From the NCBI GenBank assembly GCA_964057225.1, contig OZ059896.1, forward strand, positions 6,882,001 to 6,946,000: a stretch of 64,000 bases of DNA, given 5' to 3'. The notes beneath the pieces are model-generated. The model did not search any database, was not told the origin of the DNA, and saw nothing but the letters and a program-made list of their open reading frames with translations. Shown one piece after another: positions 32,601 through 64,000 of this stretch. The first letter of the stretch is position 1. Each line of letters begins with the position of its first letter. A program made the translations under genes and the position numbers. Source of the stretch: Auanema rhodensis (lineage: Eukaryota; Animalia; Nematoda).

Positions 32601-35600
32601 GTTTCTATTGGTCGTAACCACGTTACACTTACCTGGGTGCCACCACTTGACGATGGTGGAAGCAAAATCACTGGTTACATTGTTGAAATGCGTGAATATG
32701 GAAGCACACTCTGGGTCAAGGTTTCAGATTACAATATTCGTGATCCTGAATTCACTGTTCCAAATCTCAAGGAATTCCACGATTACGAGTTCCGCATCAT
32801 TGCTGTGAATTCTGCTGGACGTGGTATTCCATCCCTTCCCACATCACCAATAAAGATTCAAGACCTCAATGGGTCTAAGCCGGTAATTGTGGTCAAGCCT
32901 GAAGATACTGCTCAGCCATACAACCGTCGTGCAGTCTTTGTCTGTGAAGCCATTGGACGCCCAACACCTGTATGCCGTTGGATGAGAAATGGACGCGAAT
33001 TACCAGAATCTAATCGCTACCGCTTTGAAGCTCACGATGGAAGCTACCGGTTTACTATTAAGGAAGTATGGGATATTGATGCTGGAGAATACACTTGCGA
33101 AGTCAGTAACAGTTATGGATCAGATTCAGCAACTGCTCGATTGATCGTGCAAGCTCCTCCAGTTATTGAACGTGATGTACCAAACACTATCTTACCAATG
33201 AGCGAGATGGTTCGTCTTAAGATTTATTTCTCTGGAACTGCACCATTCCGTCATTGCTTGATGTTGAACAAAGAAGAAGTTCCTGAAGACCACCCAACTA
33301 TTCGCACAGTTGATTTCGATGATCATATTCTCATCACTATTCCTTCCTTAACAGCCCGTGAAGCTGGACGATATGAATACACTATCAGCAATGATTCTGG
33401 TGAAGCTACCACAGGATTCTGGCTTAATGTAACCGGATTACCATCAGCTCCACAGGGACCTCTTATGTTTAGTAATGTTGGACCTCACCAAGCTCAATTG
33501 TCTTGGCGACCACCCGTTGATGATGGAGGATCCAGAATTACCAACTATGTTGTTGAAAAGCGTGATGTATCCAAGGAAGAATGGACTGTTGTTGCTTCAT
33601 CTATTCGTGATCTTAACTTCATGATTCAAGGATTATTTGAAAATCACGAATATGAATTCCGTGTTAGCGCCGCCAACATCAATGGCCAAGGAACTCCACT
33701 TGTTGGAGACAACAGCGTCATTGCACGCCTTCCTTTCGACCCTCCATCAGCACCTCTCAACCCAGAAGTCACAGAGATCGGATCCGACTTTGTTTCTCTT
33801 AACTGGCATCGACCACTCAGCGATGGAGGCGGACGTATTCGTGGTTACATCATCGAAAAGAAGGAAGATGGTCAAGATAATTGGATTGCATGTAATCAAA
33901 ATCCATCACCTCCTCACATTTTCAATATTCCAAACTTGATCGATGGACGTAAATACCGTTTCAGAGTTTTCGCTGTTAACGATGCTGGATTATCTGACCC
34001 AGTTGAAATGTAAGTTCAAAAACATATAATCATACGTATATCTTGTTTCTTTTTAGGGAAACCATGGAGTTCCGTTCTGCTGGTTCTGGAACAGCACCTG
34101 AAATCATTTCTCCACTCTCTAATCAATCATGTGAGATTGGTCGCAGTGTAACCTTCGAATGTAAGATATCCGGGGAACCTAGACCCGAGTATCGTTGGTT
34201 CCGAGGATGCAAAGAACTTGTGGACACCAAGAAATACACCATTCTCAACAAAGGAGATACTCAAGTTTTGATTGTAAACGACCTTAACAGTGAGGACGCC
34301 GATGAATACACCTGTCGCGCAACCAACTCTTCTGGTACTAAGAGCACAAGAGCTCAACTTCAACTGAAAAGCAAACCTCGCGTTTTCATACCACCTAAGT
34401 ATCATGGAGGATATGAAGCTCAAAAGGGTGAAACTATTGAACTCAAGGTTCCCTACAAAGCATTCCCCAGTGGAGAATCGAGATGGTACAAGGATGATGA
34501 GAAGATTGAGAACGGCGGTCGCTATTCGATCACAACTGACGACAAGTTCGCAACTCTTACGATTAGAGATGCTTCAAGAGAAGATTATGCTCAATATCGT
34601 GTAGTCGTTGAAAACAGTGTTGGTCAGGACAGTGGAATCCTGACTGTTACTGTTGCTGATAGACCAGAACCACCACGTTTCCCAATCGTTGAGAATATTT
34701 TGGACGAAGCCGTTATTCTATCGTGGAAACCACCAGCACTTGATGGCGGAAGCATGGTCACAAGTTATTTAGTTGAAAAACGTGATATAAGCGGTGGATC
34801 ATGGACTCCATGTGCTAAAACACGGTTCTGCTATCTTACTGTTGAAGGATGTAGAGCTAAGAATACCTATGAATTCAGAATGAGTGCTGAGAACAAGCAT
34901 GGCATCTCAAAACCATGTGAACCAACCGCTCCTGTTGCTATTCCAGGGAATGATCGTCAACGACAACGTAACTACGAAGTTGATGAAACAGGAAAGATTA
35001 TCCGTGGACGCGGCATTGTATCTGGAAACTATGATAACTATGTTATCGATGTCTGGAAACAATATTATCCCCAAAATATTGATATCAAGCATGAGTCAGT
35101 ATTGGATCATTATGATATTCATGAGGAAATCGGAACCGGAGCTTTCGGAGTTGTTCACCGTTGTACCGAACGTGCTACCGGAAACACCTTCGCTGCGAAA
35201 TTCGTTATGACTCCTCATGAAGCTGATAAGGATACTGTACGTAAAGAAATCAACACTATGTCCGTACTCCGCCATCCAAAACTCATCAATCTTCACGATG
35301 CTTTTGATGACCAAAATGAAATGGTAATGATCTATGAATTCATGTCTGGAGGAGAACTGTTCGAACGCGTTGCTGATGATTCCAACAAGATGTCTGAAGA
35401 GGAGGCCATTGAATATACTAGACAAGTTTGCAAAGCTCTTTGTCATATGCATGAAATGAACTATGTTCATTTGGACTTGAAACCCGAAAACATTATGTTC
35501 ACAACTAAGAAGAGTAATGAGCTCAAGTTGATTGACTTCGGATTGACTGCACATCTTGACCCTCGCAACAGCATCAAGGTTACAACTGGTACAGCGGAAT

Positions 35601-38330
35601 TCGCTGCTCCTGAAGTTCTTAACGGTCAAAACGTTGGATATTACACCGATATGTGGTCTGTTGGAGTTCTCGCATACATCCTCACATCTGGCTTATCTCC
35701 ATTTGGTGGATCCACAGATGATGATACCATGAGAAATGTTAAAAATTGCGATTGGAATATGGATGATACAGCATTTAGCAGTATTTCTGAAGAAGGAAAA
35801 GACTTTATTCGTAAACTTCTTCAATCCGACCCTGCTAATCGTCTTACTATTCATCAAGCTCTTGAACATCCATGGCTTGCTAGTAGCTATACTTCTTCCA
35901 GAGATGAGCCCATTCCAAGCAGTCGCTATCATAGCATTCGGGATTCAATCAGAACCAAATACGTAAATTTATTTTTTACATTAAATCTAATTCATTCTTA
36001 TTTCATTTCAGGATGCTTGGCCAGAACCTAATCCAGCAATCGGACGTATTTCAAACTTCAGTTCTCTTCGCAAACATCGCCCAGAGGAATACAAAATTCA
36101 TGACGCATTCTTTGATCGTACTGAAGCTCAACCACGTTTCATCATCAAGCCTTATGGCACCACTGTTGGCGAGGGACAAAGTGCAAACTTCTATTGTCGT
36201 GTAATTGCTAGTTCTCCTCCCATAGTTACATGGCACCATAATGCTCGTGAACTCAAGCAATCTGTCAAATACATGAAGAAATACGATGGCAACGATTTTG
36301 GACTAACTATCAATCGTGTGAAATTGGATGATAAGGGAGAATACATTGTTCGTGCTAAGAACTCATACGGCAGCAAAGAAGAAGTTGTATTCTTAAATGT
36401 TACTCGCACCAGTGAGCCATTCAAGTGTGAGCCTTTAGAGCCAATGCGTAAAGCTCCATCATTGCCAAAGGTGGAAGAATTTGAAGAGAAGCAATGTCCA
36501 CCTAAGTTCTCCTTCCACTTGCGCCCACGTCTTATCCAGAAAAATCATCAATGCAAACTTATTTGCTCATTACAAGGAAATCCAATTCCAAAGGTCGAAT
36601 GGCTTAAAGATGGAGCTCCTGTTGATCAAGATCGTGTGCAACTCATGTTCCGTAGTGGTGTCTGTTCACTTGAGATTTTCAATGCTCGTCTTGACGATGC
36701 TGGTACCTATAGTTGTCGTGCAACGAATGAACTCGGCGAAGATTATACCGAATGTGTGATTACTGTGCAAACTAAAGGAGGCGAGCCAATTCCAAGAGTG
36801 TCTACATCAACCAGAAATAGAAGATCAGTTTATGATAGTTTACGAACTTCTGATGTGGAACGCTCTAGAAGCTATGCCGAAATTAGACGTAGTTCTAGTT
36901 ATTCGCGCGCATTTTCGCCAGATACTAGATCAGCAAAAGATGATCTTAAGATGAGAGCAGCTGCGGAAACACCGAGCTTCATTACTCAGTTACAAAACGT
37001 CGATGTTGACGCCGGAGAAAACGCTGAGTTAAGCTGCTCCGTAAGTTGCCAAACCCAAAAATAAAAATAATAACTTCATTTTCAGGTGTCTGCAACTCCT
37101 GAACCAATTATTGAATGGCTCCACAACGGAGAACGTTTGAACAACTCTAGATATCAAACTACTTTTATCGGAGGAAAAGCTCGGCTCAATATTCTCAATG
37201 CTGAACCATCTGACAGCGGTGAATACTACTGCAGAGCGAGCAACTCTGCCGGACAGGAATCTAGTAAAGCCACCCTGTCCGTGAAACCTTCTCAAGCTAA
37301 TGGCACTGTTATTCAAAGTAACGAAGAAACCAGGTTCGTATATGTACAATAACAATTCAAACATTAAGAATTTCAAAACTAATATATAGTATTCAAAAAT
37401 ATAATTTAAAACAAAACAAATAAATCAAATTCGCTTTATTAATAATTACATTTTTCAGTGTTGTTAAGCATTTAACTAGTCAAATTGTTGCCAGTGGTAG
37501 CCCCATCCATCTTCAAGCAGTCAGTAAAGGAAGCGTTCAAAACGTCCATTGGACAAAGAATGGAAAAGAGGTACTTCTTTTTCTTTCACAAATAGCAAAA
37601 GGAGAGACGTAAACAATTTTCTGTTAAAGATTAAGAATCCGTCTAATGATGTTAAAACAACAACGACAAAATACTTTTTTTTTCTTAAATAAATAAATAA
37701 TGATACATATTTTACATGTTATGTACATTTATTATTTAGATTGAGGGAAATGACAGGATACAGACCCAAGCTGATGGAAACAACTACAGCTTGAGCATTG
37801 CTGATGCCACTGCCGACGACGCTGGTCAATACTATTTGGAAATTACTTCCAGCGACAAATCTCTTGTTACTGTAGCTTCTGTTGTTGTTTTAGGTAAACC
37901 TATTTTTTTAATTTTTTTATCAATAACTCGTGTACATTAGATGTATCTAACGACCCTCCAGTCACAAAATTGCCTAACTCCGTTAGTGTGACAGAGGGCT
38001 CTGCCACCAAGTTCATCCTTGAATTCGAAGATGCCGAAAACTATACTGTACAGTGGTTCAAGGTATACAACAAAACTTTTTTAAATTACAACAATTTTTG
38101 TTTCAGGGATCTGATAAGGTCGAAAAATCTGACCGCCATAAATCCGTGAAATCTGGAAATACCTTCAAGTTGGATTTCAAGGTATAATTTAACCTAAAAG
38201 AATGAATAGTAATATTTTTGATAATTTGTAGGAAGTTTCCAACTCTGATGAAGGAATTTATGTAGCCAAAGTAATCAAAGATAAGAAGGCTATTGCGAAA
38301 TACTCAGCTGCTTTGCTTGTTGAGCATTAA
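2668..38330 (+). CDS. unc-22: Twitchin (giant Ig/Fn3 muscle protein kinase), multi-exon; 5' end (start of first Ig domain) lies upstream of the window
   Basis: First visible exon 2668-2758 reads [31 protein letters not shown] (twitchin Ig1). Dozens of GT-AG exons encode Ig-Fn3-Fn3 super-repeats (WxPPxDDGG, YxFRVxAVN), then a kinase and C-terminal Ig domains. The last exon 38232-38330 ends [15 protein letters not shown]. Confidence 0.97.
6701..7168 (+). CDS. unc-22: Putative internal alternative first coding exon of unc-22 (156 aa, Ser/Thr/Arg-rich)
   Basis: Acceptor-like TTTACAG ends at 6643. Three in-frame stops precede ATG 6701. The ORF ends at a strong donor AGC|GTAAGT (7168/7169), phase 0, compatible with unc-22 exon 10275-10427. 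Confidence 0.6.
7538..7610 (-). tRNA. tRNA-Lys (anticodon CTT), intronic and antisense to unc-22
   Basis: Reverse complement GCCCGGTTAGCTCAGTCGGTAGAGCACCAGACTCTTAATCTGGCTGTCGCGGGTTCGAGCCCCGCATCGGGCT folds into a full cloverleaf with A and B boxes. A T7 run (Pol III terminator) follows at 7523-7529. Confidence 0.97.
19413..19727 (+). CDS. unc-22: unc-22 single-Fn3 exon, candidate cassette exon
   Basis: 315 nt, phase 1-1, encodes exactly one Fn3 domain; flanked by ~610 and ~520 nt introns while most neighbouring introns are ~45 nt. Confidence 0.75.
35110..35880 (+). other. unc-22: Twitchin Ser/Thr kinase domain (CaMK/MLCK-like), within the large exon starting ~34058
   Basis: IGTGAFGVV glycine loop, [23 protein letters not shown] and DMWSVGV motifs are all intact; domain boundaries approximate. 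Confidence 0.93.
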
Positions 38331-50000: not shown

Positions 50001-53000
50001 GCCAATAGCCGGTGTGTTTGAAGTGTGAAAATTTAAACTAATTAAATAATATAGAAGAAATAATTGTTTTCGACACACCTGCTACAGAACCTCAAGGTGC
50101 TGAAGGCTCAGAACCTTCTATTCTTGAAGGACCATCGTCTGCCACCATTCCTGCTAGTATTGAATCGTTCACCTTGAAATGCTTAGCTGACGGTGACCCC
50201 AAGCCGACTTTACTTTGGAAGTTTGGAGGTGGAAATGTTGTGAATAATAATGTGTATAACCTTCAAAATATTTCAGACAATGTTTTAACAGAAAACACTG
50301 GAAAATATGAGATGAATGCAAATAATTTAATAATTCATGATATAAAAACAGCTGACACAGGACAATATTCATGTATTGCTCGTAATGTTCATGGAACAGA
50401 ATTCAAAACAGCTTTCATATCAGTATCTGGATCAGGTACAATTTATAATTTTTTTTTGTAAATTAGCTTAACGTACAGATCAAAAATTCATTTCGCAACC
50501 TCCTACCAACCAGAGCATGTTAATTGGTACCAGCCTCGACATTCCTTGTGGCGTTCATAATGATTATCGTCAAGACGCAAAAGTTTCTTGGTTTTTCAAT
50601 GTACTTTTTGTGTTATATATACTTTATAATATTTAATACATATTGTAGGATGAAGAAATAACTAATGCAGGAAATTCTCAGTTAAGAATTAGTATAAATC
50701 GAAAAGGAGGACTTCATATTAGTCAAGTTGGACCAGATAGTATCGGAGAATACAGGTATTAGTTTGCGTAATAATTTCTTCTCAGTTGCTTTATTTAAAG
50801 ATGTGAAGTTGCTATTGGAAGTAAAACTGAAGGTGCTTCTATGTGGTTAGAAATTATAGGTAATTCAACGTATGAAGATTTCATGCCATTGAATATATTT
50901 TTAAGAAAAACCAAGCATGCCGACATCTGTATCAGCTGTTCTTGTTAATGACAGCTTACCTGCAAAAATTCGTGTTGATTGGGAGGAAGGTTTTAATGGA
51001 AATTCTCCTATCATCAGGTTTTTTGTCCTATGGTTCATTCATTATCTCATACTTGTTATTTGCAGATACATGATTCAAATGAGAACAATTGGACCAACAG
51101 AATTGTTTAGTGACTGGGAAACTGTGGGCGAAACAGACCCTTCAGAGGTACTTTTTATATATACTGTAACCTTTTGATTTTTTTCGTTTTTAGAGTTGCT
51201 GCTCTTTTTTATTGGATAATCTTAAACCATCTGTCACAGCAGAATTCAGAGTTATAGCTTCTAACAAACATGGTGGTGGCAAACCTTCTTTGCCTTCAGG
51301 TTTGTATATGCAATGCTTAGTTCTTTTATGTTAGATGTATAGATAAGGTAACAATGCCTCAACAACCACCCGCCGCTGCTCCCAAAAATGTTGCAGCTTC
51401 TGCTAGGTCTTCGAACAGTATCATCGTGCAATGGCAAAAGCCACAAGATGAGCAGTTCAGTGGGGATATCTTGGGATATATCATCAGGTGCTTGCTTAAT
51501 GTAACAATGTCAGTTAATTCTAATTTTCCAGATATCGCCTTTCTGGATATACTTTACCTTGGACTGAAAAAAATGTTACTACTCGAGATGCTCGAAATGC
51601 GGTATTATGATCACTAGTTCGACAAATTTCTTATTGTATACTTAAAGGTTATCGATCAGTTAATAACTTGGCAAGAATATGAGATACAAGTTGCGGCATA
51701 CAATGAACGAGGACTTGGTGTATTTAGCAAAAATATATTGGTTACGACAGCTGAAGGAGGTTATTACTTTACAAAATAGTTATTCGAACACAAATTATTT
51801 TCAGTACCAAATCAAGCTCCTAAAAAAGTTAAAGTTGATGTCATTAACTCTACTGCTGTTACTGTATCCTTTATATCTCCAGACCAACAAAGAATTCCTG
51901 GTGTTAACCTCGGATATAAAGTTTGTGTTTGTGATGCAAACTGTAAATTACTCTAAAATTATAGATTCAATTTTGGAAAGGCGATACTGAAAAAGAAACT
52001 TTATTCAAACAAGTAAAAGTTGATCCAACTGCTAGAATGATTAAAGTAGATGTTGATGGACTTGAAAAATTTGGTTTGTTTTATATTTAATAACAACAAT
52101 CATTTCAATGGTTTAAGGACACTATAAATTGACCGTTTTGTGCTATACTTCGCCTGGTGACGGACCCAAGAGTAATCCCGTTGAATTTACAACTAAGGAA
52201 GATATCCCTGATCATGTACATTCTCTTACATTACATGATGTAAATAATACCTATTAACTTATTTTAATTTTAATTTGTCGTTTCTAGGTAACATTTGATG
52301 GAGCGACTGTGATGTGGAATCCGCCTCTTCAACCAAATGGTATTATAACACGATACGTTTTACGTTATTGGAATGATCAAACTCCTGAGGCTAAAACTAC
52401 CATGGAACAAAAAGGAGATCAACACAGTGTTGTTATAACAGGCCTTCAGCCAACTACAAAATACTCAATTGAAATATTTGCTTCAACCTCTGTTGGTGAT
52501 GGGCCACGTGATGAATCGAAATTTGAATCAGGCCGTCCACCAGGCATGTACTTTTTGCTCTTTTTATAATAACCGTTAATTCAGTGTTACCTGAACAACC
52601 CAATTCTCTATCTGTTTCGGATATACAAGCTCGATCAATCCATTTGAGTTTTATACCTGGGCATGATGGTTTTACAGCAATTCGTCAGTGGATTGTGGAA
52701 GCAAAAGTAGCTGAAATGGGAGTTTATTCTAATGTCTTTAATATCAGGTATGTTATATGATATACTCTCTTATTTATCAGTTTTTATAGCGCTCCGAAAG
52801 CGAAGTCCTTTGTAGTTTCGGGACTTCGTCCTTATACACAATATCAACTTCGGTTAGTCGCTGTTAATGTAAAAGGTCGGAGTACGCCCAGTGAACCAAC
52901 GCGAATGTTTGAAGTATACCATTACCGTTACGCCGTTTTTTTAAATTATCTCTCATTAAGACAAAACAAACGGAACCGGAAAGTTTAGCAACGCCTCTTT

Positions 53001-56000
53001 TCGCTGAGCCTGTGTCAGCCACAACCATTTCTTTATCATGGACTCCCTTATTGGCCTCACAATGGAATGGACAACCAAAAGGATATTTAATTCATTATAG
53101 AGTTAAAGGAGAAACAGAATGGGTAATTGAAAAAGTTAGATATGATAAAACCTTACTGATATTATTAAGAAAGAAATAAGAGCTTCATCTCTACGTGCTA
53201 GTGATTTTGTATTGTCGTCTTTATTACCCTTTACAACTTATGAAATTGAGCTTTTTACTGAGAATATGTTTGGAAGAAGTTCCTCTCCAGGCGTTGTGGA
53301 AGCAAAGTGAGACTTGATGTGGATTGCAATTACGCTTCTTACTACATTTAGGACTTATGAAAGTACACCGTCTGCTCCTCCCTTGAATATCCGTGCTATA
53401 AATGAGGGTTTACGCACTGCTGTGGTTCGATGGGCGGATGTACCTCAAGAATCTCGAAATGGTGATATTCTGGGATATACTGTACGTGTTTTGATCTTCA
53501 ATGGTAGCATAATAGAATTCCTTAAGGTGCGAGTTGTTCCTAAAGCGGAGTGGTTAAGGTCAGATGAGACTAGAGTCATTGATGTGCCTGGAACAGAAAA
53601 TCTAATGACCACAATAGCTGGATTGAAAGCCTTTACAGAATACGAAGTTTATGTTTCTGCATATACTATTGTTGGAAATGGCTTAGAGAATACTATTCCT
53701 ACAATCCTTCTAACAGATGAAGATCGTATGTCGTTATAGTGACTTCCAGTATATATTCATTTTTTCTAGTTCCTGGGCCACCGTCGGGAGTCGCATTTTC
53801 AGTGGTCAGTGAAGATGAAGTTCGCCTCAAGTGGACCCCTCCTGAGAATCCTAATGGAAAAATTAAAGTAATTATTGGTTTTTGATTAGTAGACGTTTAA
53901 TTTCTTTTAGAGTTATGTTGTTTCGTATTGGATTACTTCTGAAGGTCCTTCTTCTTCACATCGTACTACTATTCCAACTCTTGGATTTTTCGCTGCAGCT
54001 AGTAATTAATAAGACATTATAAAATATCTAATGATGTTGTTCAGATGTTAAACAGAATACTGGATACACCTTTTCTCTTGCTGCTGTAAATTCTATTGGC
54101 ACTGGACCAGAAGCACAAGTTGAAGTATATACATCATCTGTGAGATGTACGTTTAAGAAAAATCCTTATAATTATATTCTCCAAATGGTTTAGTACCTGT
54201 ACGAAATCCTCCCATGCCTGTTAGGGATGATAGAGCAATTCAATCACCTACTCAAATTTCTATACATTGGGATTATTCATCAAATGGAAAAACAGATGAA
54301 TATGAGGAATCTCCTGTTCGATCAGTTCAAGTTTGTTTTTCTTTTTCTTTTGATACTTAATATCCACATTAGGTTGAATATCAAAAAGCAAATGAAGACT
54401 TATGGACTCCTTCCCTACGTTCTATACCGGGAGATAAAACATCTGTGACTATTAACAGGTAATAAAATTAATATTGAATAGATGATACAATTCCTTTTAA
54501 GACTTTCTCCTAATACTGCTTATCGATTCCGCATCAAATTTGTGGGAGATTTCCAGCCTTCTATTTGGAGTTCTGAATCGGAATGGTTTCGAACATTACC
54601 TGCTGCTCCGGTGGCTATACCTTCTAAAATTACTGTTACTCCATATGATTCTAGTAGTATATTATTGCATTGGACTACGCCCTCTAGGTACCTACCTATA
54701 AAGTATATTAATTAAGAATATTTTGTTTTTAAGGTCGGAATGGAATGCCGATGCAATCGGATATCATATTTCTTATAAGGAATATCCCTCTAATGAAAGT
54801 TGGAGGAGCGATGATTTACCAGCTCAAAGTGAACGTCCAGATGTAGAACAGTATATTTTACCCAAATTGGACAGGTAAAAACATGTATTAAACTTTTTTT
54901 ATCAATATATTATAGTTTCCGTCATTACATAGTCCGAATGAGTGCATATAACTCTGAAGGAGATGGTTCATTTTCCGTTCCTTTATTCGTTTATGTTGGA
55001 TATTCGATTCCTAAGAGGAACATTACACATTTGTCTGGTGAAGCTAAATCATCATCTTCCATTTCTCTAAAATGGGATGAATGGCTTGATGACGGTAGCG
55101 ATTATATCAGTGGATTTAAGGTATCAAAAGTTTATGTTTGTTACATAAAGATTTTTGTCAAGGTTCGATTTGTACCTGTCACATCAATTTTATCTCCGAC
55201 AACTGAAGAAGAACTTATTGTTGTTGAAAACAACTCTTGTGTACTGAGTGATTTGAAAAAGTTTACTGAATATCAGGTAATTGAGTATATTTTACAAATG
55301 TTACAACTATTGGTCTGCAGATAACCGTCTCAGCTTATAACAGAGCTGGAGAAGGAGGAACAAGCGCTGTACGTTTAAGAACAATGGAAGACGTTCCTGG
55401 CCCAGTTAGCAATCTTCGATTTGTTGATGTTCTTCTTAACTCTGTTAAAGTGGTTTGGGATAAACCATTGCTACCCAATGGAGTTGTAACTAAATATACA
55501 GTTCATTACAGAACTTCCAAAGATAAGGTATTTGTATGCATGCAAACCTCTTTTAATAATAGCAAATTTTAGTCTGAGTACACTAATGAAGTTCAAACAT
55601 CAACTGATCATTCCTACTTCATTGCAACTAATTTACGTGAAGGTACAGACTATATATTTACTGTCTGGGCGGAAACATCTGCTGGACGAGGAACAGAATC
55701 TATAGCTAATGTAACTATTGGTCCTAGTACAAGTACGTGCATCGTGTTTTACAAATTACAACCTCAAATCTGTTAAGGCGGTCCACCAGCACCTACAACG
55801 CCTACGGTAATTCCGGGCCAATCATCTGTCACCATCTCATGGAAAGATTCAATCAACCACAGAATTGTGGGGCATCTGATTCAAGCTAAACGAGTTTCTG
55901 TTGTTTCTCTTGTAAGCATTTTTCATTGATCTTTTTAGTTTTTATGCCTAATTTAGCCTACAAGTACCCCGATACAAAGACGACATTCGAGATCACCACC

Positions 56001-57329
56001 TCATCTGGCACATACCATGGGAGAATGGGTGACTCTCAAAGTTGTAGATGGAACCTCAACAAAGCATGAAGTACGTGCGCTATTGCGCGGAAGTAATCAT
56101 ATATTTTTTCTTTAGATAAGCTATAGAGATCTAGAACCATCAAGTCAATATGTTTTCCGTGTCTTCGCACGAGATGAAAAGGGTATAGGTTATCCTAGTA
56201 CTCAATCTGATGAGTTGGAAGTTCCATGTATGTTAACGCTTCATTAAGAAAAATATTTCAATGTTATAGCATCTATTCCTGATGATCCTTTCTATACATC
56301 ATGGTGGTTTATAGGATTGGTTGCTATGTCAACATTTGTAGTTATTGTAGTTGTAATTGCTTTTCTCTGTGTTACTGGTTAGTTGCATTATCACGTATGC
56401 TTAATTTATCTTGATATTTTTAGGTTCACAAGCCAAATTCAAGAGAGAGAAACGAAATTCTGTAGACAGCTTACAGCTTGCAGATGGAAATTTCGTTGCT
56501 TATCAAATGAAAGGACCAAGAGGGATGAACAGAAGCAGGTAATCCGCAAAACAAAAATCTCAATATCATTATGATTAAGGACGGATTTGATGATACGTCC
56601 AGGAACTACGCAGTCCTGGCTTTCTGACAGAGATCCTCCTGCCTATGGTAGTGTTCTTGGAGTTGACAGAGAAAGCACTGCAAATGGGGGAAGTGTTGTG
56701 AATATGTATGGCCTGGCAACAGATGTGATCCCAGCTCAACCAAATCATCAGGCTATGCAAAGGTATTGACCATTTTGCCAATATCTTTCAGAATGTTCAC
56801 ATTCTAGACTATCTGCCTTAGTTGGAAGAGACATTAGAAGCTCGGGAAGTGCCTATGTAGCTAACTCTTGTCGGGGTACTGGAGAGCAAGGCGAATACGG
56901 TACAAGAGGCGAATACACTATTCGGTGAGTTCGCTACTTGATATTACTCTGATTCATACATCGTATTCAGGCCTGAGTTCGGTTATGAATCAAGATCCGG
57001 GTATGGTTCCACTCTTCGGCAGAATGAATATGAAGATGGAGATTCTTTTGATGAAGAAGATCCTAGTGCTGATGAAGCTGAAAATCACGAAGCTGGAGAT
57101 ATAGCTAGTCATTATGGACAGGTTGATCAATACAGGTATTGAATTCTGCTTTTTCCTCATCTTATTCGGTTTTAGGGATACATGGAGAAGAGTACGTGAA
57201 ACGGATGCCGTCCAAAGCAATTCTGACTCAAACAAAGCACCTACAGAAAGTCCATCAAGTGAATCAACATGGCCATCCCAACCGGCCCCGGCCCCGGCGT
57301 TGGCTAATGGATTTTCCTCATTTGTTTGA
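47031..57329 (+). CDS. rig-4: Sidekick-family IgSF adhesion receptor (signal peptide, ~6 Ig, ~13 Fn3, TM, PDZ-binding tail); roughly 60 small exons
   Basis: Signal peptide MREFLKLLLLICCITATTS; GFNGNSPI and MPQQPPAAAPKNVAASARS Fn3 motifs; DDPFYTSWWF followed by a hydrophobic TM segment (~56280-56378); C-terminus GFSSFV*, typical of Sidekick. Confidence 0.93.
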
Positions 57330-57881
57330 ATTTGTTTGTATTTTCGAGGTTAAAAACCTTTCTCTTCACTTCTCTACTCTCATCTTGCCTGTTGATATTT
57401 CTGTGATAGCAGGTGCCGTTTCTCAAATTTTTTGACGGTATTCCTTCAAAATAGTAATATTTATTTTGTATATGTGCAGGTCAGCCTCGGGTACTTTTTA
57501 AAGTTAACAGATTATTAACGCTTATGTAATTTGTAATTCTCTGACTATTTCGATCTCTAAGATATTGTATTGTGGCAGAGCCAATGAATATTCTTGCATT
57601 TTCACATGCATCATTTCAGTGACCAAAACTTGAAGTCTCTAGAATAAAACACAAAACGATCTATAAATGAAAAGAATTGTATGATACTTCTTTCATTCTG
57701 TACATTCATGAGCCAGAAGGATTTAATGTATGAATGAACGGGCGGATCCGCAGCTGTGTAGTTAGATATGCATGAGAAAACCATGAAGATCAGAATCTTT
57801 AATAAGTGACAGAATCAGGAAGAAGGTCTTCTGGTAGTTGCTTCATCGTCCACTTCGTTTGTGGTGATCCAAACATCTATA

Positions 57882-58361
57882 ATGGAAGTTGCTGCTGATC
57901 TTCGCCCAATTCTTGGACCATCTCTTGTAAGATTGGATCCTATGAGAATTAAGCAATTACAGTGAGTTTTCGCTGCAGACACATGTGCACATCTGCACTA
58001 GTGAAACTTTTTACTAATTTGAATATTATGTATTTACGTGTTTACACGTATTTTTTACGAGAATGTTATGCTTGTTTTATTCAGATCTCCCATTGTTTAC
58101 AAGGCTATCGATGATCTGGCTAAACTTTCTGCTCAATGTATGCAATTAAGAGCTCCTCTCACTTGCTGTGAGAAGTTGATTTCATCTGAGCACACCTTAT
58201 ATTTGTGCTGGAGATATGATGAGTGAGCTCTGAACAATAATTGCTTACAATCTAGAAATAATTTTAGAGAACAAAAGGTTTCCCAACTTCTTGGCTTTGC
58301 TAAAGTTGGTAGGAAGCAGCTGTTTCTCTATGATGCTGCAATGCAAACATACGAAGGAGAG
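57882..58361 (+). CDS. mec-17: Alpha-tubulin acetyltransferase MEC-17, exons 1-3 only (57882-57961, 58085-58222, 58268-58361); remainder not in window
   Basis: [59 protein letters not shown]...[25 protein letters not shown], followed by a GT donor at 58362. Confidence 0.93.
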
Positions 58362-58463: not shown

Positions 58464-61400
58464 TTAAAGTCGACGGCGGTAAGATTGCTCTGGTTCGGGT
58501 TCTGGTAATTTGAGCTTCTTAATGGTATCGTAGCTGAAATATGTTTATTAAGTCTTCTTAGCATCATAACTGAACACCCATTATAAATGTTTGATTTTTT
58601 ACTTACCTTGGTGTGGCATTCTTTCCATTTTCGTTGGTTTGTCCGATGTTAATGGCGTTTGAGTTGTTTCCTACATTGGTTTGGGCTCCTCCGACTTGGG
58701 TGTTAGATTGTCCTTGGTTGTTGTTTTGTCCGAGGTTTTGGGTGTGGATGAGGTTGTTCTTGATCAAGTCAGCGGCTCCAGCTCCAGTTCCGTAAGTTGG
58801 GAGTTGTGGCATGTAGGTGGATGGGGATGGCATGTACTTGGAGGCATCGTATTGTGGTCCCTTTCCATTGTTGTTGGTTTGTCCGATGTTGATGGCGTTT
58901 GAGTTTTCTCCAACGTTGGTTTGGGCTCCTCCGACTTGGGTGCTGGATTGTCCTTGGTTGTTGTTTTGTCCGAGGTTTTGGGTATGGATGAGGTTGTTCT
59001 TGATCAAGTCAGCGGCTCCAGCTCCAGTTCCGTAAGTTGGGAGTTGTGGCATGTAGGTGGATGGGGATGGCATGTACTTGGAGGCATCGTATTGTGGTCC
59101 CTTTCCGTTGTTGTTGGTTTGTCCGAGGTTGATAGAGTTAGCGTTGTTTCCTGCATTGGTTTGAGCTCCTCCCATTTGAGCATTGTTCTGTCCTTGTGAG
59201 TTGGTTTGTCCCAAGTTCTTGGTGTTGAAAAGGTTTCCGGCAACTAAGTTTTGTGGAAGATATTGGGCAGCATTACCATATCCTGGTTGAACGTATCCTG
59301 GTTGAACGTATCCTGGTTGGACGTATCCTGGTTGGACATATTCTGGTTGACCGTAGCTTGGAGCATTAGTAGCATCATATTGTGGTCCCTTTCCGTTGTT
59401 GTTGGTCTGTCCGAGGTTGATAGAGTTAGCGTTGTTTCCTGCATTGGTTTGAGCTCCTCCCATTTGAGCATTGTTCTGTCCTTGTGAGTTGGTTTGTCCC
59501 AAGTTCTTGGTGTTGAAAAGATTTCCGGCAACTAAGTTTTGTGGAAGATATTGGGCAGCATTACCATATCCTGGTTGAACGTATCCTGGCTGAACGTATC
59601 CTGGTTGGACGTATCCTGGTTGGACATATTCTGGTTGACCGTAGCTTGGAGCATTAGTAGCATCATATTGTGGTCCTCCTTGTCCTCCGTTGTTGTTGGT
59701 TTGTCCGAGGTTGATAGAGTTAGCGTTGTTTCCTACATTGGTTTGAGCTCCTCCCATTTGAGCATTGTTCTGTCCTTGTGAGCTGGTTTGTCCCAAGTTC
59801 TTGGTGTTGAAAAGATTTCCAGCAACTAAGTTTTGTGGAAGATATTGGGCAGCATTACCATATCCTGGTTGAACGTATCCTGGCTGAACGTATCCTGGTT
59901 GGACATATCCTGGTTGACCATAGCTTGGAGCATTAGTAGCATCATATTGTGGTCCTCCTTGTCCTCCGTTGTTGTTGGTTTGTCCGAGGTTGATAGAGTT
60001 AGCGTTGTTTCCTACATTGGTTTGAGCTCCTCCCATTTGAGCATTGTTCTGTCCTTGTGAGCTGGTTTGTCCCAAGTTCTTGGTGTTGAAAAGATTTCCA
60101 GCAACTAAGTTTTGTGGAAGATATTGGGCAGCATTACCATATCCTGGTTGAACGTATCCTGGCTGAACGTATCCTGGTTGGACATATCCTGGTTGACCAT
60201 AGCTTGGAGCATTAGTAGCATCATATTGTGGTCCTCCTTGTCCTCCGTTGTTGTTGGTCTGTCCGAGGTTGATAGAGTTAGCATTGTTTCCTACATTGGT
60301 TTGAGCTCCTCCCATTTGAGCATTAGTCTGTCCTTGAGCATTGTTTTGTCCCAAATTTTGGCCAAATACATGATTTCCTAAGAAGAAGTTTTGTGGAAGG
60401 TATTGAGCAGCTGGTCCATAGTTTTGTGGAACATATTCGGGCTGTAAAAGAATTAATTTTTTTGGTCTTTTTTTTTCTGATTACTCTTGGCTGGTCGTTA
60501 TGCTGTCCTTGTCCAACATTGTTCTCAGTTGTGCCGGCAGTGTTAATAGCTCCAGATTGTTGAGTTGTTCTTGGATTGATGATGTTACCCTTAAATTAAC
60601 TTTGATTTCAAAGCTAAAAAGATATTATTACCTTTCCAAGAGCCAAGTTGAGTAAATTGGAAGCTTGAATATTTGGTAATCCCAGGTGGATTAAACCATC
60701 GTTTTGAGGATGCTGCTGAAATTATAAATTTGCGTATAACAATCTAATGCTCATTGTTGTTTACTTGCAAAGTAAGTCTGTTATCTTGAACTCTGATGAT
60801 TCCGACGCCTGGAACATCGTATGCTGGTTGTTGGTTACCCCCCTTAAAATAATAAAACCATTGAAATGCATTGGGAAAAGCTCATTTGTACATTGTTATT
60901 AACTTGAGAAACTTGTACATTATTAACATTATATCCAACATTGTTCTGTGCCCCACCCTGTTGAATACTATGTTGTCCCTGAGTATTATCCTAAAACAAC
61001 CATTTTGTATAGCTTATGAGGGGCACCCTAACTTGTTTCCCTGTTAACATTCCTACGGCATTTCCTAAGAATCTCAGGACGTCATAACTGGGACGAGGGC
61101 TGGACTGTGGCAACTTTAAAATTAATGTTACTGGGAACTTTTGGTGGGTGTGGAACTTACGTTGTTGTTGTTTACTTGAGATACTTCGATGTTGTTAGTA
61201 TTAGACAGTATATTTGTCATCTCACCTCCCACCTGAACATTCCCTTGACCCTGCTGATTATTCTAAACCTTTTCCCATTTTTTTTTCTCTGCAGGTCTTC
61301 TGACCTGTGTGGCTTGGTTATTTTTCACGTTGTTGAATCCCAGAAGTCTCCCAATACCAAGAAAATCGTTACTGGGTCGTGCCTTGAAAGTTATTAAAGA

Positions 61401-61912
61401 GCAGTATATAAAAGTGATTAAGATATGCCCCATGTGTTTTCCTGTTTTCAATAAAAATTATATACTCACAGCAGTTTGAGAAGCCTTAATATCAGTTTTT
61501 GGTGCGACCTGGCTGGTAATAGTTCCAGTGTTGTGAACATTTCCTCCACTTGGTCCTGTGCTCTGAAAGGCATAGAGTTGGTTTTGCATGCTTTGTTATA
61601 AATTTACAATCAATGTTCTTGTTGGCAGCATAGCCACATTGTGTAACAGAGTTCCTAATGCTGAGGTGATAGTTGGAGCATCTTGACTGGGCTTCTGAAC
61701 TCATGAAAGAATGAAAATTGTGATAATTTTTCCGAATATACCTTCTCATCGACAGTCTTTCCATTTGCGGTGTAATCCTTTGGTTGAACTCGAGGAGAGC
61801 TAGCAGCTACTCTCTTCACTTCTTTGGGATCGTTGTTAGAATATCCAGAATTCTGAAGATCGTACTGGCATGCTACAAGTGTAGCCAGAGCCAGGAGACA
61901 TACTACACGCAT
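58464..61912 (-). CDS. Secreted Gln/Asn/Gly/Tyr-rich block-repeat protein A (~960 aa, 12 exons), unknown family
   Basis: Exons 61912-61742, 61694-61608, 61562-61470, 61382-61305, 61262-61161, 61113-61033, 60990-60892, 60842-60765, 60715-60632, 60589-60485, 60441-58607 and 58533-58464 join via GT-AG introns into one 2883-nt frame. Signal peptide MRVVCLLALATLVAC; TATAAAA at 62010-62004; AATAAA at 58416-58411 and 58392-58387. Confidence 0.85.
58620..60350 (-). repeat. Coding tandem repeat array: four 279-294 bp units with nested 15-bp (YVQPG) repeats, then two 240-bp units
   Basis: Near-identical units recur at offsets of 279, 294 and 288 bp, then 240 bp; the nested motif tatcctggttgaacg varies in copy number. 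Confidence 0.95.
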
Positions 61913-62895
61913 TGTCTAAAACATTATTATTATTAAAAAGAAAAAAAGACATAAAAGAATATGAGCGTAAGATCATGGTCTCCTTAATGCATGGAGAGAA
62001 CGCTTTTATATAACTCTTGATCTGACTAATTTAAATCGTTTCGGTTTTTTAACTGAAATTTAGGTTACCACTGCCTATATTAATTAAGTATTATCAACGA
62101 ATTCTAATAAGTGGTAGATTGTTTTCAAGGACAATATTGCTTTCTGTGAGTGACAAGTTTTTTTGCTGTTTTGCACTCATTCATTGACATTAGATACTCG
62201 ACCAGTTTTGTTTCTGATAAAACTAATTAAGAATATTGTTGTTAGAAGTGGACCTTATTTGTTTTGATATTAACGCTGCATTTATTTCTAATCATGATAT
62301 GTTTGCAGTTCTAAATCATCTGATTTATAAGTGAACAGTTTAAATTTATTTCATATAATAATAGAAATAGTCCTATCTTTAGTTCTATCAATATGAAAAG
62401 AACAGGATTTTATCATTATTTTTCACTTCGTTTTCTTATCCCCGTAAACTAGTAAAACTCAAAGTTAATTCATCGCTTTCTCTTCAGTAATACGAAGAAA
62501 AACATGAAAATTGTTGATTTTTTTTTCAAATATGCTATACATAAGATAGTGAAATGTTTTCGTTACTACTTTTTGTATTAATTCTAATTCGGTATGACCT
62601 TAATAATCTTCAAATTAATGTAACGTTAATTAGTCTTAAGAAGTAATATAGTATTAATTAATCTTGAAAGTATTATAGTTTCAATTTTATAATCATGATA
62701 AGCTATTATAATTATGATTTTAACGATTAGGTTGAATTGTTTCTTTCAAGTTTTTTATGGACTCTTTTGTTTTAGTTTTAAGTAAGAAGTAGATATATGA
62801 TATATAAACTTTATTTTGCAAATCATACATAGTTAACCAACACCATACAACATTTGCACTTATTATTAAGTATCAATCTTTAGAGTTTCAATCGG

Positions 62896-62917
62896 CTTCT
62901 AAAAATATTTTTAGAAG
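62896..62917. repeat. Perfect 22-bp palindrome in the 3' UTR of gene B
   Basis: CTTCTAAAAAT|ATTTTTAGAAG is its own reverse complement. Confidence 0.85.
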
Positions 62918-62926
62918 GCTAGAAGT

Positions 62927-64000
62927 TTAAGCACGGCGACGGTAAGATTGCTCTGGCTCTGGGGCTGGGAGGATGTGCTTTCTAACGGTATCGTAGCTGA
63001 AATATGTTGATTAAGTAATGAAAGTTTGGAAGCATTGTATTACCTTGGGGAGCTTCCTCCGTTGTTATTGGTTTGTCCAACATTGATGTTGTTGGAGTTG
63101 GTGTTGTGGTTGATCATATCACCTCCCTTTTGGACGCTGGTTTGTCCTTGGTTGTTGGTTTGGGCGAGATCCTTGGCGTTGAAGATGTTTCCGGTAACAA
63201 CGTGTGGTGCAACGTAGCCTCCGTAGCTTCCGTAGTTTGGTTGGGATGGGTAAGATATATATGGTTGTGGGTAGCTTGGTTGAACGTATTGGGTATCGTA
63301 TTGTGGTCCCTTTCCGTTGTTGTTGGTTTGTCCGATGTTGATGGAGTTGGTGTTTTGTCCAACGTTGGTTTGGGCTCCTCCGACTTGGGTGTTGGATTGT
63401 CCTTGTTGGTTGGTCTGTCCAAGGTTTTGGGTGTTGATCTTGTTAGCGGCCAAGAGTTGTCCAATGTTGTGTGGGTATACTGGGATAGTATGGTAGGAAT
63501 CCAACAATTTGATGTTAACATTTGGGCTGAGGATAGATTGGCTGTTGGAGTTTCCGTTTCCAGTTTGCTTGGTTCCCAAAAGACCGCCGAGAAGGCCTCC
63601 GAGGAGTCCACCAGACTTTTCTGAAGAAACAGCGGTAGTCTGAACGGTTGGCTCATTGCGAGCTGGTTGTCCGTATCCTGGTTCTGGTTGTCCGTAGCTT
63701 GGCTGTCCGTAGCTTGGTTGTCCGTATTGGGAATCGTATTGTGGTCCCTTTCCGTTGTTGTTGGTTTGTCCGATGTTGATGGCATTGGAGTTCTCTCCAA
63801 CGTTGGTTTGGGCTCCTCCGACTTGGGTGCTGGATTGTCCTTGGTTGTTGTTTTGTCCTAATCCAGTGTAGTCAACCTTGTTTCCGGCGAAGATGTTTTG
63901 TGGAAGGTATTGTCCAACGTTTCCGTAGCTTGGTTGAGATGGGTAGCTTGGTTGAGCTGGGTAGGTGGTTGGGACGTAGGTTGGGGCGTACTTGGAGGCA
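62927..64000 (-). CDS. Paralogous Q/N/G/Y-rich repeat protein B, 3' part (5' end beyond window)
   Basis: Open frame from 63999 to the donor at 63044 (ASKYAPTYVP...GQNNNQGQSSTQVGGAQTNVGENSNAINIGQTNNNGKGPQYD...). Last exon 62996-62927 reads (S)YDTVRKHILPAPEPEQSYRRRA*, with the same intron position and phase as gene A. AATAAA at 62815-62810. Confidence 0.88.

What the first reader, a model, noticed from the sequence alone, without database searches (positions are those of the whole stretch)
58464..63750. P-x-(Y/N/Q)-D motif starts almost every module: possible polyprotein processing code
Seen: gene A has QYD immediately after the signal peptide, then PSQD, PSND, PSYD, PAYD and PQND in the divergent N-terminal exons, six PQYD in the repeat array, and a final PSYD created across the last splice junction. 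Gene B has two PQYD and the same junctional PSYD. The motif persists where flanking sequence has diverged, and Asp is otherwise scarce. Established: BMP1/tolloid-type astacins prefer Asp at P1', and Tyr next to acidic residues is a sulfation context. Inference: the precursor is cut into single spacer+core monomers, and a conserved C-terminal propeptide (D...PEPEQSYRRR) is removed to trigger assembly.
Basis: partly seen in the sequence, partly recalled or inferred. Interest (0 to 1): 0.7.

Follow-up and report, generated by a model that had tools for sequence, protein, structure and literature searches.

The report
Conserved Asp motif in worm repeat proteins
A short Pro-x-Tyr-Asp signature really does head every linker of two secreted repeat proteins in this Auanema-like roundworm and in their hookworm relatives, and it fits a protease cutting site, but no data yet show that the proteins are cut.

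Summary
Gene A (58464-61912, minus strand) and gene B (62927 to beyond 64000, minus strand) are spliced nematode genes for secreted Q/N/G/Y-rich modular proteins. In gene A, 12 of 22 Asp lie in P-x-(Y/N/Q)-D, against 0.5 expected by shuffling. Both junction-spanning PSYD are real.

The genes belong to an unnamed family found only in Ancylostoma, Necator, Nippostrongylus and Auanema. It has no Pfam, PDB or literature match. Family-wide the motif reads [K/R]-P-S-Y-D-A-P-x-Y-G. An Asp occurs in 111 of 112 inter-core linkers, and D-x-P or E-x-P in all 23 first linkers, where no Tyr precedes it. Synonymous codon variation shows selection on the protein.

Published peptide work names YVA|DAPK as the best substrate of Asp-P1' astacins. 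However, the array linkers here lack Pro at +2, the conserved block also resembles Tyr cross-link motifs, and nothing shows cleavage.

The scan had already noted this stretch (s1-409944, s1-419251).

Verdict: real, conserved, uncharacterised motif. Cleavage is plausible (about 0.35-0.4) but unproven.

The parts
58464..61912 (-). Gene A: 12 exons, from the ATG at 61912 to the TAA at 58464-58466. A TTTTAG acceptor lies 3 nt before the ATG and an AATAAA lies in the 3' UTR.
61742..61912 (-). Gene A exon 1: signal peptide plus the family's conserved N-terminal domain (..SGY.NN.P..V..A..SP...DYT).
   Evidence: Alignment A3 with 12 relatives, 36-43% identity and 12 invariant columns
60485..61694 (-). 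Gene A exons 2-10: phase-0 exons that mostly alternate between linker exons and roughly 31-35-aa Q/N core exons. Linker exons 2, 4, 6, 8 and 9 carry PSQD, PSND, PSYD, PAYD and PQND (exons 8 and 9 are adjacent linker exons). Exons 3, 5, 7 and 10 are cores.
   Evidence: The Necator P0021 gene has the same layout.
58607..60441 (-). Gene A exon 11: an intron-less array. It starts with a first core, followed by six PQYD-headed modules: four of 93-96 aa and two of 80 aa.
58464..58533 (-). Gene A last exon. It completes the junctional PSYD and encodes the conserved tail ..PEPEPEQSYRRRL plus the stop codon.
   Evidence: The tail is conserved in P0035 (Auanema sp. JU1783) and in hookworm proteins.
62927..64000 (-). 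Gene B, whose 5' part lies beyond the window. The last exon is 62927-62996 and the large exon runs from 63044 to beyond 64000. It carries two PQYD, a junctional PSYD and the tail ..PAPEPEQSYRRRA.
63307..63744 (-). Gene B long module, with a GGLLGGLLGGLLG stretch and a hydrophobic segment before its core. Its core-proximal half has a counterpart in the sister species.
   Evidence: BLASTP against P0040:421-542, 62% identity over 74 aa, E 3e-24

Best explanation
SHOWN. Genes A and B belong to an unnamed, lineage-restricted family of secreted Q/N/G/Y-rich modular proteins. The family was found only in Auanema, the hookworms Ancylostoma and Necator, and Nippostrongylus. A module is a linker followed by a 33-residue Q/N core (GQxNxQGQ..GG[A/D]QTN..VNVGQxNNQ). 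In the ancestral gene layout each of the two parts is its own phase-0 exon.

Family-wide it reads [K/R]-P-S-Y-D-A-P-x-Y-G. The Asp is the near-universal residue and is normally followed by x-Pro. The motif is under protein-level purifying selection. In two low-confidence models it lies in coil between strand-prone cores.

INFERRED. The Asp marks a scissile bond (x|D) for an Asp-P1' astacin metalloprotease acting after secretion. Nematodes have many such enzymes working on extracellular matrix. Cutting would give 8-10 kDa units that begin with Asp and would also detach the conserved C-terminal tail.

For: Family and homology:
- 26 relatives at 34-45% identity, all strongylid.
- A module profile against 1.84 billion representatives gave only 13 hits, which carry only Ancylostoma, Necator, Nippostrongylus or Auanema sp. 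JU1783 names; two unnamed Logan contigs have no taxon.
- The N-terminal domain is conserved.
- The exon layout is shared with Necator.
- A MEC-17-type acetyltransferase is the neighbour in both the window and Necator.

Motif:
- 12 of 22 Asp in gene A lie in the motif, against 0.5 expected.
- When linkers are anchored on the cores, 111 of 112 strongylid linkers have the Asp: 86 as P.[YNQ]D, 21 as YD, 4 as D.P.
- Position frequencies are Y-1 94%, A+1 80%, P+2 93%.
- All 23 genuine first linkers have D-x-P or E-x-P with no Tyr before it, so the element is centred on Asp, not on Tyr.
- In gene A's diverged linkers Tyr is replaced by Q or N in 3 of 5, while Pro and Asp stay.
- PSYD codons vary synonymously, including Ser encoded as both TCN and AGC.

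Enzymology (PMC3186203):
- Astacins with an S1' Arg prefer Asp at P1'.
- D-A-P is cut far better than D-P-A.
- YVA|DAPK is the best substrate for meprins, LAST_MAM, LAST, BMP-1 and ovastacin.
- The zebrafish hatching enzyme has the same preference.

Nematode context:
- DPY-31 astacin is proposed, from genetic and in vitro work, to cleave the C-terminus of SQT-3 (PMC11304992, PMC10538796, PMC4406453).
- NAS-6 helps degrade the low-complexity pharyngeal cuticle (PMC9629831).

Accessibility: AF2 puts the motifs in coil between strand blocks, at low confidence.
Against: - There is no direct evidence of cleavage.
- In this window the array linkers read PQYD-ATNAP, -ASKY, -SQY and -TQY. Pro at +2 is missing there and is present in only 2 of gene A's 5 N-terminal linkers.
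- The conserved block extends four to five residues on the non-prime side (K/R, P, S, Y). From my own knowledge, that is more than astacins usually read.
- Also from my own knowledge, BMP1 sites usually have a small residue at P1, not Tyr.
- The block holds up to three tyrosines (-5, -1, +4) plus Lys, like known Tyr cross-link motifs.
- Repeated structural proteins often keep short motifs without being cut.
- Both AF2 models are unreliable (pLDDT about 40).
Confidence: 0.37

Rival explanations
1. Tyr-centred modification or cross-link site in an uncut protein. The K-P-S-Y-D-A-P-S-Y-G block would be where tyrosines are sulfated (TPST-1 type, with an acidic neighbour) or oxidatively coupled (DUOX/MLT-7 di- and tri-tyrosine). 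That coupling would tie the Q/N cores into an insoluble or elastic matrix, as in resilin or mussel foot protein repeats.
For: - Tyr is frequent at -1 (94%), +4 (74%) and -5 (44%), with Lys/Arg at -4/-3.
- The spacers are Tyr/Pro/Gly-rich, for example GYVQP repeats.
- Hookworm members end in PPAYKP repeats.
- Tyrosine cross-linking and TPST-1 sulfation are established for nematode cuticle proteins (PMC11304992).
- After the signal peptide the Tyr is kept while the Asp varies.
- The resemblance to the resilin repeat (GGRPSDSYGAPGGGN) and the Mfp-1 repeat (AKPSYPPTYK) is recalled from memory only.
Against: - All 23 first linkers keep D-x-P or E-x-P with no Tyr before the acidic residue.
- Three of five diverged linkers in gene A have Q or N in place of Tyr but keep the Asp.
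- Many other tyrosines nearby are not individually conserved, so the invariance of Asp is left unexplained.
Confidence: 0.22
2. Structural boundary or docking motif with no enzyme acting on it. The Pro..Asp(-x-Pro) head would cap or terminate the beta-prone Q/N core, or bind a partner such as chitin, another matrix protein or a cation. It would set the register when cores stack.
For: - The motif always sits at the same place, a few Gly-rich residues after a core and before the spacer.
- It persists in gene A's N-terminal modules, which have no Tyr-rich spacer at all.
- The best AF2 model gives regular four-strand blocks per core, separated by coil at the motif.
Against: - AF2 confidence is too low to show any contact (pLDDT 39-40).
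- A cap would be expected to keep a fixed distance to the core, but the distance from the motif to the next core varies from about 20 to over 100 residues.
Confidence: 0.2
3. Cleavage on the other side of the Asp (P-S-Y-D|A). The enzyme would be an Asp/Asn-specific endopeptidase such as legumain at acid pH, or an astacin lacking the S1' Arg, which cuts D|A.
For: - Crayfish astacin and LAST cut YVAD|APK mainly between Asp and Ala (PMC3186203).
- The N/Q/Y-D variants in gene A put an Asn next to the Asp.
Against: No data support it. Legumain prefers Asn at P1, and Asn is everywhere in these proteins, so specificity for this one site would be unexplained.
Confidence: 0.05
4. No function: the motif is only a by-product of recent tandem duplication and biased composition.
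For: The six array copies are 92% identical duplicates.
Against: - The motif is kept across Auanema, hookworms and Nippostrongylus at 34-45% overall identity.
- Codons turn over synonymously.
- Composition shuffles give 0.5 against 12 observed.
Confidence: 0.01

Closest known systems
Astacin (BMP1/tolloid, meprin, hatching-enzyme) substrates, e.g. procollagen C-propeptides, DSPP, and nematode SQT-3 with DPY-31
   Same: Secreted matrix proteins with an Asp at the presumed P1'. The family consensus D-A-P equals the best in-vitro prime-side context. A short conserved C-terminal piece lies behind the last site, as in SQT-3.
   Different: Known substrates have one or a few sites, not one per repeat. 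Cleavage here is not shown. This window's array lacks Pro at +2. Tyr at P1 is unusual for BMP1 (own knowledge).
Nematode polyprotein allergens (NPA/ABA-1) and neuropeptide-type polyprotein precursors
   Same: Secreted tandem arrays of similar units, about 8-15 kDa each, with a short conserved signature between units.
   Different: Those are cut at dibasic (RxKR-type) sites by furin-like convertases and their units are helical lipid binders. Here there are no dibasic sites between modules, no Pfam match, and the units are Q/N-rich and beta-prone.
Secreted low-complexity proteins of the C. elegans pharyngeal cuticle (IDPA/B/C, ABU/PQN groups; PMC9629831)
   Same: Signal peptide, Q/N/G/P-rich disordered repeats, amyloid-like or phase-separating matrix, and turnover helped by the astacin NAS-6.
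   Different: No detectable homology, because no C. elegans hit appeared in any search. The family here lacks the Cys-rich repeats of ABU/PQN. Its tissue of expression is unknown.
Curli subunit CsgA and other Q/N-ladder functional amyloids
   Same: Short imperfect repeats with regularly spaced Gln, Asn and Gly that are predicted to be beta-strand rich.
   Different: No Curlin_rpt match even at E<=1, no PDB relative, and no confident solenoid model. The cores here are separated by long Tyr/Pro-rich spacers.
Tyr cross-linked elastomer and adhesive repeats (resilin, mussel Mfp-1, filarial sheath proteins)
   Same: Pro/Ser/Tyr/Gly/Asp/Lys-rich short motifs repeated many times in secreted structural proteins. 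The resemblance is recalled from memory only.
   Different: No homology was tested or expected. The Asp, not the Tyr, is the near-universal residue here.

Membership tests
Unnamed Auanema/strongylid Q/N-core repeat family (e.g. NECAME_09020, Y032_0132g1720, Q1695_007669) | Signal peptide followed by the conserved N-terminal domain ..SGYGNNNP..V..A..SP.NKPVDYT | tested here: met
   Exon 1 aligns with 12 relatives and has 12 invariant columns
Unnamed Auanema/strongylid Q/N-core repeat family (e.g. NECAME_09020, Y032_0132g1720, Q1695_007669) | Repeated 33-residue core GQxNxQGQ..GG[A/D]QTN..[IV]N[IV]GQxNN | tested here: met
   E 8e-118 to 1e-25 against 26 relatives; alignment A1; nine full GGAQTN cores in the window, plus a tenth divergent one in gene B (GGDMIN), all in genes A and B
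Unnamed Auanema/strongylid Q/N-core repeat family (e.g. NECAME_09020, Y032_0132g1720, Q1695_007669) | Linker head with an invariant Asp (P-x-Y-D, or Y-D-A-P in relatives) | tested here: met
Unnamed Auanema/strongylid Q/N-core repeat family (e.g. NECAME_09020, Y032_0132g1720, Q1695_007669) | Alternating phase-0 core and linker exons, and a C-terminal tail ending ..PEPE..Y-R-[RH] | tested here: met
   Exon maps; tails
Astacin substrate | Asp at P1' in an accessible segment | tested here: met
   Asp is present in 111 of 112 inter-core linkers. Coil is predicted, but at pLDDT about 40. This is a sequence feature only.
Astacin substrate | Small residue at P2' and Pro at P3' (D-A-P preferred over D-P-A; PMC3186203) | tested here: inconclusive
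   Met in strongylid relatives (A+1 80%, P+2 93%). In this window it is met only in exons 2 (DAP) and 8 (DVP), and not in the array.
Astacin substrate | The bond is actually cleaved by an astacin in vivo or in vitro | not testable with these tools
Nematode polyprotein allergen (NPA) type polyprotein | Dibasic convertase sites between units; helical ABA-1-like units | tested here: not met
   No KR/RR/KK between modules in the large exon; no Pfam hit
Curlin repeat (CsgA) amyloid | Match to the Pfam Curlin_rpt profile, or a confident beta-solenoid model | tested here: not met
   No hit at E<=1 or at E<=0.1 in relatives; AF2 pLDDT 39-40
Tyrosine sulfation or dityrosine site | Modified Tyr at position -1 or +4 | not testable with these tools
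   Only the sequence context (Tyr next to Asp, Pro nearby) can be seen

The most novel reading that the evidence does not exclude
These proteins are true astacin-processed polyproteins. One Asp-P1' astacin would cut at every x|D(-A-P) linker head and before the conserved tail. That would release 8-10 kDa Q/N-rich units which then self-assemble into a functional amyloid-like matrix in Auanema and in hookworms. This would be a processing code not described for any animal polyprotein.
Probability: 0.17. Interest if true: 0.75.

Novelty: new variant of a known kind. Interest (0 to 1): 0.48.

Why it matters
The family consists only of 'hypothetical proteins' in hookworms (Necator, Ancylostoma) and Nippostrongylus. 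There it forms tandem clusters, with at least four adjacent members in Nippostrongylus and two to three in Necator.

Finding clear members with the same motif, exon layout and gene neighbour in a free-living, culturable Auanema-type worm gives a tractable system for studying a parasite matrix or secreted protein family.

If the Asp motif is an astacin site, it would link an orphan substrate family to the large and druggable nematode astacin family. It would also give a defined peptide (..K-P-S-Y|D-A-P-S-Y-G..) for enzyme assays. If it is instead a cross-link or sulfation site, it defines a new nematode structural repeat.

Tried and rejected
- **Family libraries.** Pfam on the large exons and on four relatives gave only sub-threshold or compositional hits: DUF1801, Penaeidin and glycine zipper for the window, and ivWA-helical_N with no individual domain stretch for P0001. 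NCBIfam, a PDB profile search and the ESM Atlas gave nothing usable.
- **N-terminal domain search.** A second word-based search using only the N-terminal domain found the same family and no C. elegans link.
- **Literature.** Searches by locus tags, by peptide strings and by UniRef names found nothing relevant. No supplementary files are held for the two A. ceylanicum papers. Novelli 2006 is not held.
- **Structure.** Two AlphaFold2 runs, one on three modules of the window and one on five modules of P0006, each with family alignments, gave pLDDT 39 and 40. I therefore ran no fold search, because matches would be meaningless.
- **Reads.** Splicing, transcript ends and expression are unverified.
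- **Spliced model.** Exons were searched by reference, and junction codons were read by eye. Exon residues were pooled only for a local composition shuffle.
- **Rejected readings.** An NPA-type polyprotein is rejected because there are no dibasic sites. Curlin membership is rejected because there is no profile match. Chance or a duplication artefact is rejected by the cross-species conservation.
- **Gene neighbourhood.** No astacin, peroxidase or tyrosinase gene was seen next to the Necator or Nippostrongylus clusters or among the window ORFs I scanned.

Full report
**1. What is there**

The region holds two minus-strand, nematode-style spliced genes.

Gene A runs from the ATG at 61912 to the TAA at 58464-58466 and has 12 exons.
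- Exon 1 encodes a signal peptide and a short N-terminal domain.
- Exons 2-10 are small phase-0 exons.
- Exon 11 (60441-58607) is an intron-less array of 611 codons.
- Exon 12 encodes a 22-residue tail.
- Acceptors are TTTCAG- or TTTTAG-like, and donors are GTAAGT-like.

Gene B (62927 to beyond 64000) has the same last intron and tail and runs off the window.

Exons were used by reference, and the junction codons were read directly: CCA AG | C TAC GAT in both genes gives P-S-Y-D.

It is also supported by an annotated sister-species protein fragment that carries the same junction peptide..KTPSYDAKIKKAPEPEPEQAYRRRA (P0035).

**2. The observation**

- Gene A has 22 Asp in 959 exon-encoded residues, and 12 of them lie in P.[YNQ]D.
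- Composition shuffles give a mean of 0.5 and a maximum of 5 in 20000.
- The six array copies are recent duplicates and amount to about two independent cases.
- The five diverged N-terminal linker exons, the two gene B copies and the two junctional copies are independent enough.

**3. What the genes are**

The large exon finds 26 proteins at 34-45% identity. All are 'hypothetical' and all come from Nippostrongylus, Necator and Ancylostoma.

A profile of 30 single modules, searched against 1.84 billion representatives, finds only 13 proteins. By name these are the same genera plus Auanema sp. JU1783; two unnamed Logan contigs have no taxon.

The window is 78-82% identical in DNA to a JU1783 contig.

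Pfam, NCBIfam, PDB, the ESM Atlas and the literature hold nothing on the family.

Several features support orthology rather than mere compositional likeness:
- The N-terminal domain aligns with 12 invariant columns.
- The tail ..PEPE..Y-R-[RH].. is shared.
- The Necator gene for P0021 alternates 33-residue core exons with linker exons, as gene A exons 4-7 do.
- A MEC-17-type acetyltransferase lies next to the family both in Necator and here.

In Nippostrongylus the family forms a dense tandem cluster.

**4. The motif family-wide**

I anchored on the cores, not on the motif, to avoid circularity. Of 112 strongylid inter-core linkers, 86 have P.[YNQ]D, 21 have only Y-D (mostly [KR]-[GS]-Y-D-A-P), 4 have only D-A-P, and one has none.

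Around the Asp, in 95 distinct contexts:
- Y-1 94%
- A+1 80%
- P+2 93%
- Y+4 74%
- P-3 66%
- S-2 63%
- K/R at -4 or -3, 85%

This selection fixes position 0 by construction and biases -1 and +2.

The first linker, between the N-terminal domain and the first core, has D-x-P or E-x-P in all 23 genuine cases (S-N-D-F-P, H-D-A-P, E-D-T-P and similar). It never has a Tyr in front. Gene A's PSQDAP in exon 2 is its counterpart.

The 'QYD' after the signal peptide behaves the other way round: the Tyr is kept and the Asp is present in only 7 of 13.

PSYD is written with many synonymous codon sets in Necator, including both Ser codon families. Selection therefore acts on the peptide.

The better description of the motif is an Asp-centred linker head, [K/R]-P-S-Y-D-A-P-x-Y-G. 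In the Auanema lineage two to three residues are inserted between D and A-P-S-Y (PQYD-ATN-APSYG, PQYD-SKY-APSYP).

**5. Structure**

Two AlphaFold2 runs with family alignments gave pLDDT 39 and 40. The better one shows four strands per core and coil at each motif, but neither model can be trusted, so I ran no fold search. The safest statement is that the monomer is not confidently foldable, the cores are strand-prone, and the motif lies in a flexible segment.

**6. Mechanism**

Becker-Pauly et al. (PMC3186203) report the following:
- Astacins with an Arg in S1' prefer Asp at P1'.
- Pro is favoured at P2' or P3', but with Asp at P1' it must sit at P3'.
[quoted passage not shown] - The zebrafish hatching enzyme shares the preference.

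Nematodes use astacins on matrix. [quoted passage not shown]

This, together with the Asp-centred conservation, makes x|D cleavage the single best-fitting mechanism. I put it at about 0.37.

Several points count against it:
- Nothing shows cleavage.
- This window's own array lacks Pro at +2.
- Conservation extends well onto the non-prime side.
- The tyrosine cluster with Lys resembles cross-link or sulfation contexts that are well established in nematode cuticle.

The rivals are a Tyr modification or cross-link site (0.22), a structural or docking boundary (0.20), cleavage after the Asp (0.05) and no function (0.01).

**7. Verdict**

The processing itself, the monomer products and the 'propeptide trigger' remain untested.

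The scan had already flagged this stretch and the neighbouring window as N/Q-rich secreted repeat proteins (s1-409944, s1-419251).

Noticed in passing
window 58038-58358 (+): There are two exons of a MEC-17/alpha-tubulin acetyltransferase-like gene (Pfam Acetyltransf_16, profile positions 25-65, E 2.6e-07). They end about 100 nt before gene A's stop codon, on the opposite strand. I found no exon for the rest of the catalytic domain downstream in the window. The gene is therefore either truncated or continues beyond genes A and B, which would then be nested in its intron. An Acetyltransf_16 gene also neighbours the family in Necator (L001 7169-9553).
   Followed up: partly
window about 20000-38000 (+): A GC-richer block (40-44% against about 32% elsewhere) encodes a giant Ig/FN3 protein with a protein kinase domain, which is a twitchin/UNC-22-like architecture. 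It has unusually long open exons (811 and 662 codons).
   Followed up: partly
window about 50100-57400 (+): A second multi-exon gene with I-set Ig and FN3 domains, of the cell-adhesion or receptor type. I did not identify it further.
   Followed up: no
window 63307-63744 (-), gene B: One linker is far longer than the others. It holds a GGLLGGLLGGLLG glycine-zipper-like run and a hydrophobic segment (..IKLLDSYHTIPVYPHNIGQLL..). The core-proximal part is kept in the sister species (P0040:421-542, 62% identity over 74 aa), so this is a special, conserved module.
   Followed up: partly
P0002 (Necator RB195_002930) and P0022 (A. ceylanicum ANCCEY_05648): Both database proteins contain a second, internal signal peptide plus N-terminal domain (..MYFFALLLLGVGCAFANYDTQPSGYG..). 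They are probably two adjacent family genes fused by gene prediction.
   Followed up: no
window 59279-59355, 59567-59643, 59859-59922, 60138-60201 (-): Inside each type-A spacer, a 15-nt unit encoding G-Y-V-Q-P is repeated 4-5 times, and the copy number differs between modules (4.3 against 5.1). This is a micro-array nested in the module array.
   Followed up: no
P0034 (Nippostrongylus, 128 aa): A minimal family member as annotated: signal peptide, N-terminal domain, one core, G-Y-D-A-P and the tail. If the gene model is right, a single module with the Asp site before the tail is a viable protein.
   Followed up: no
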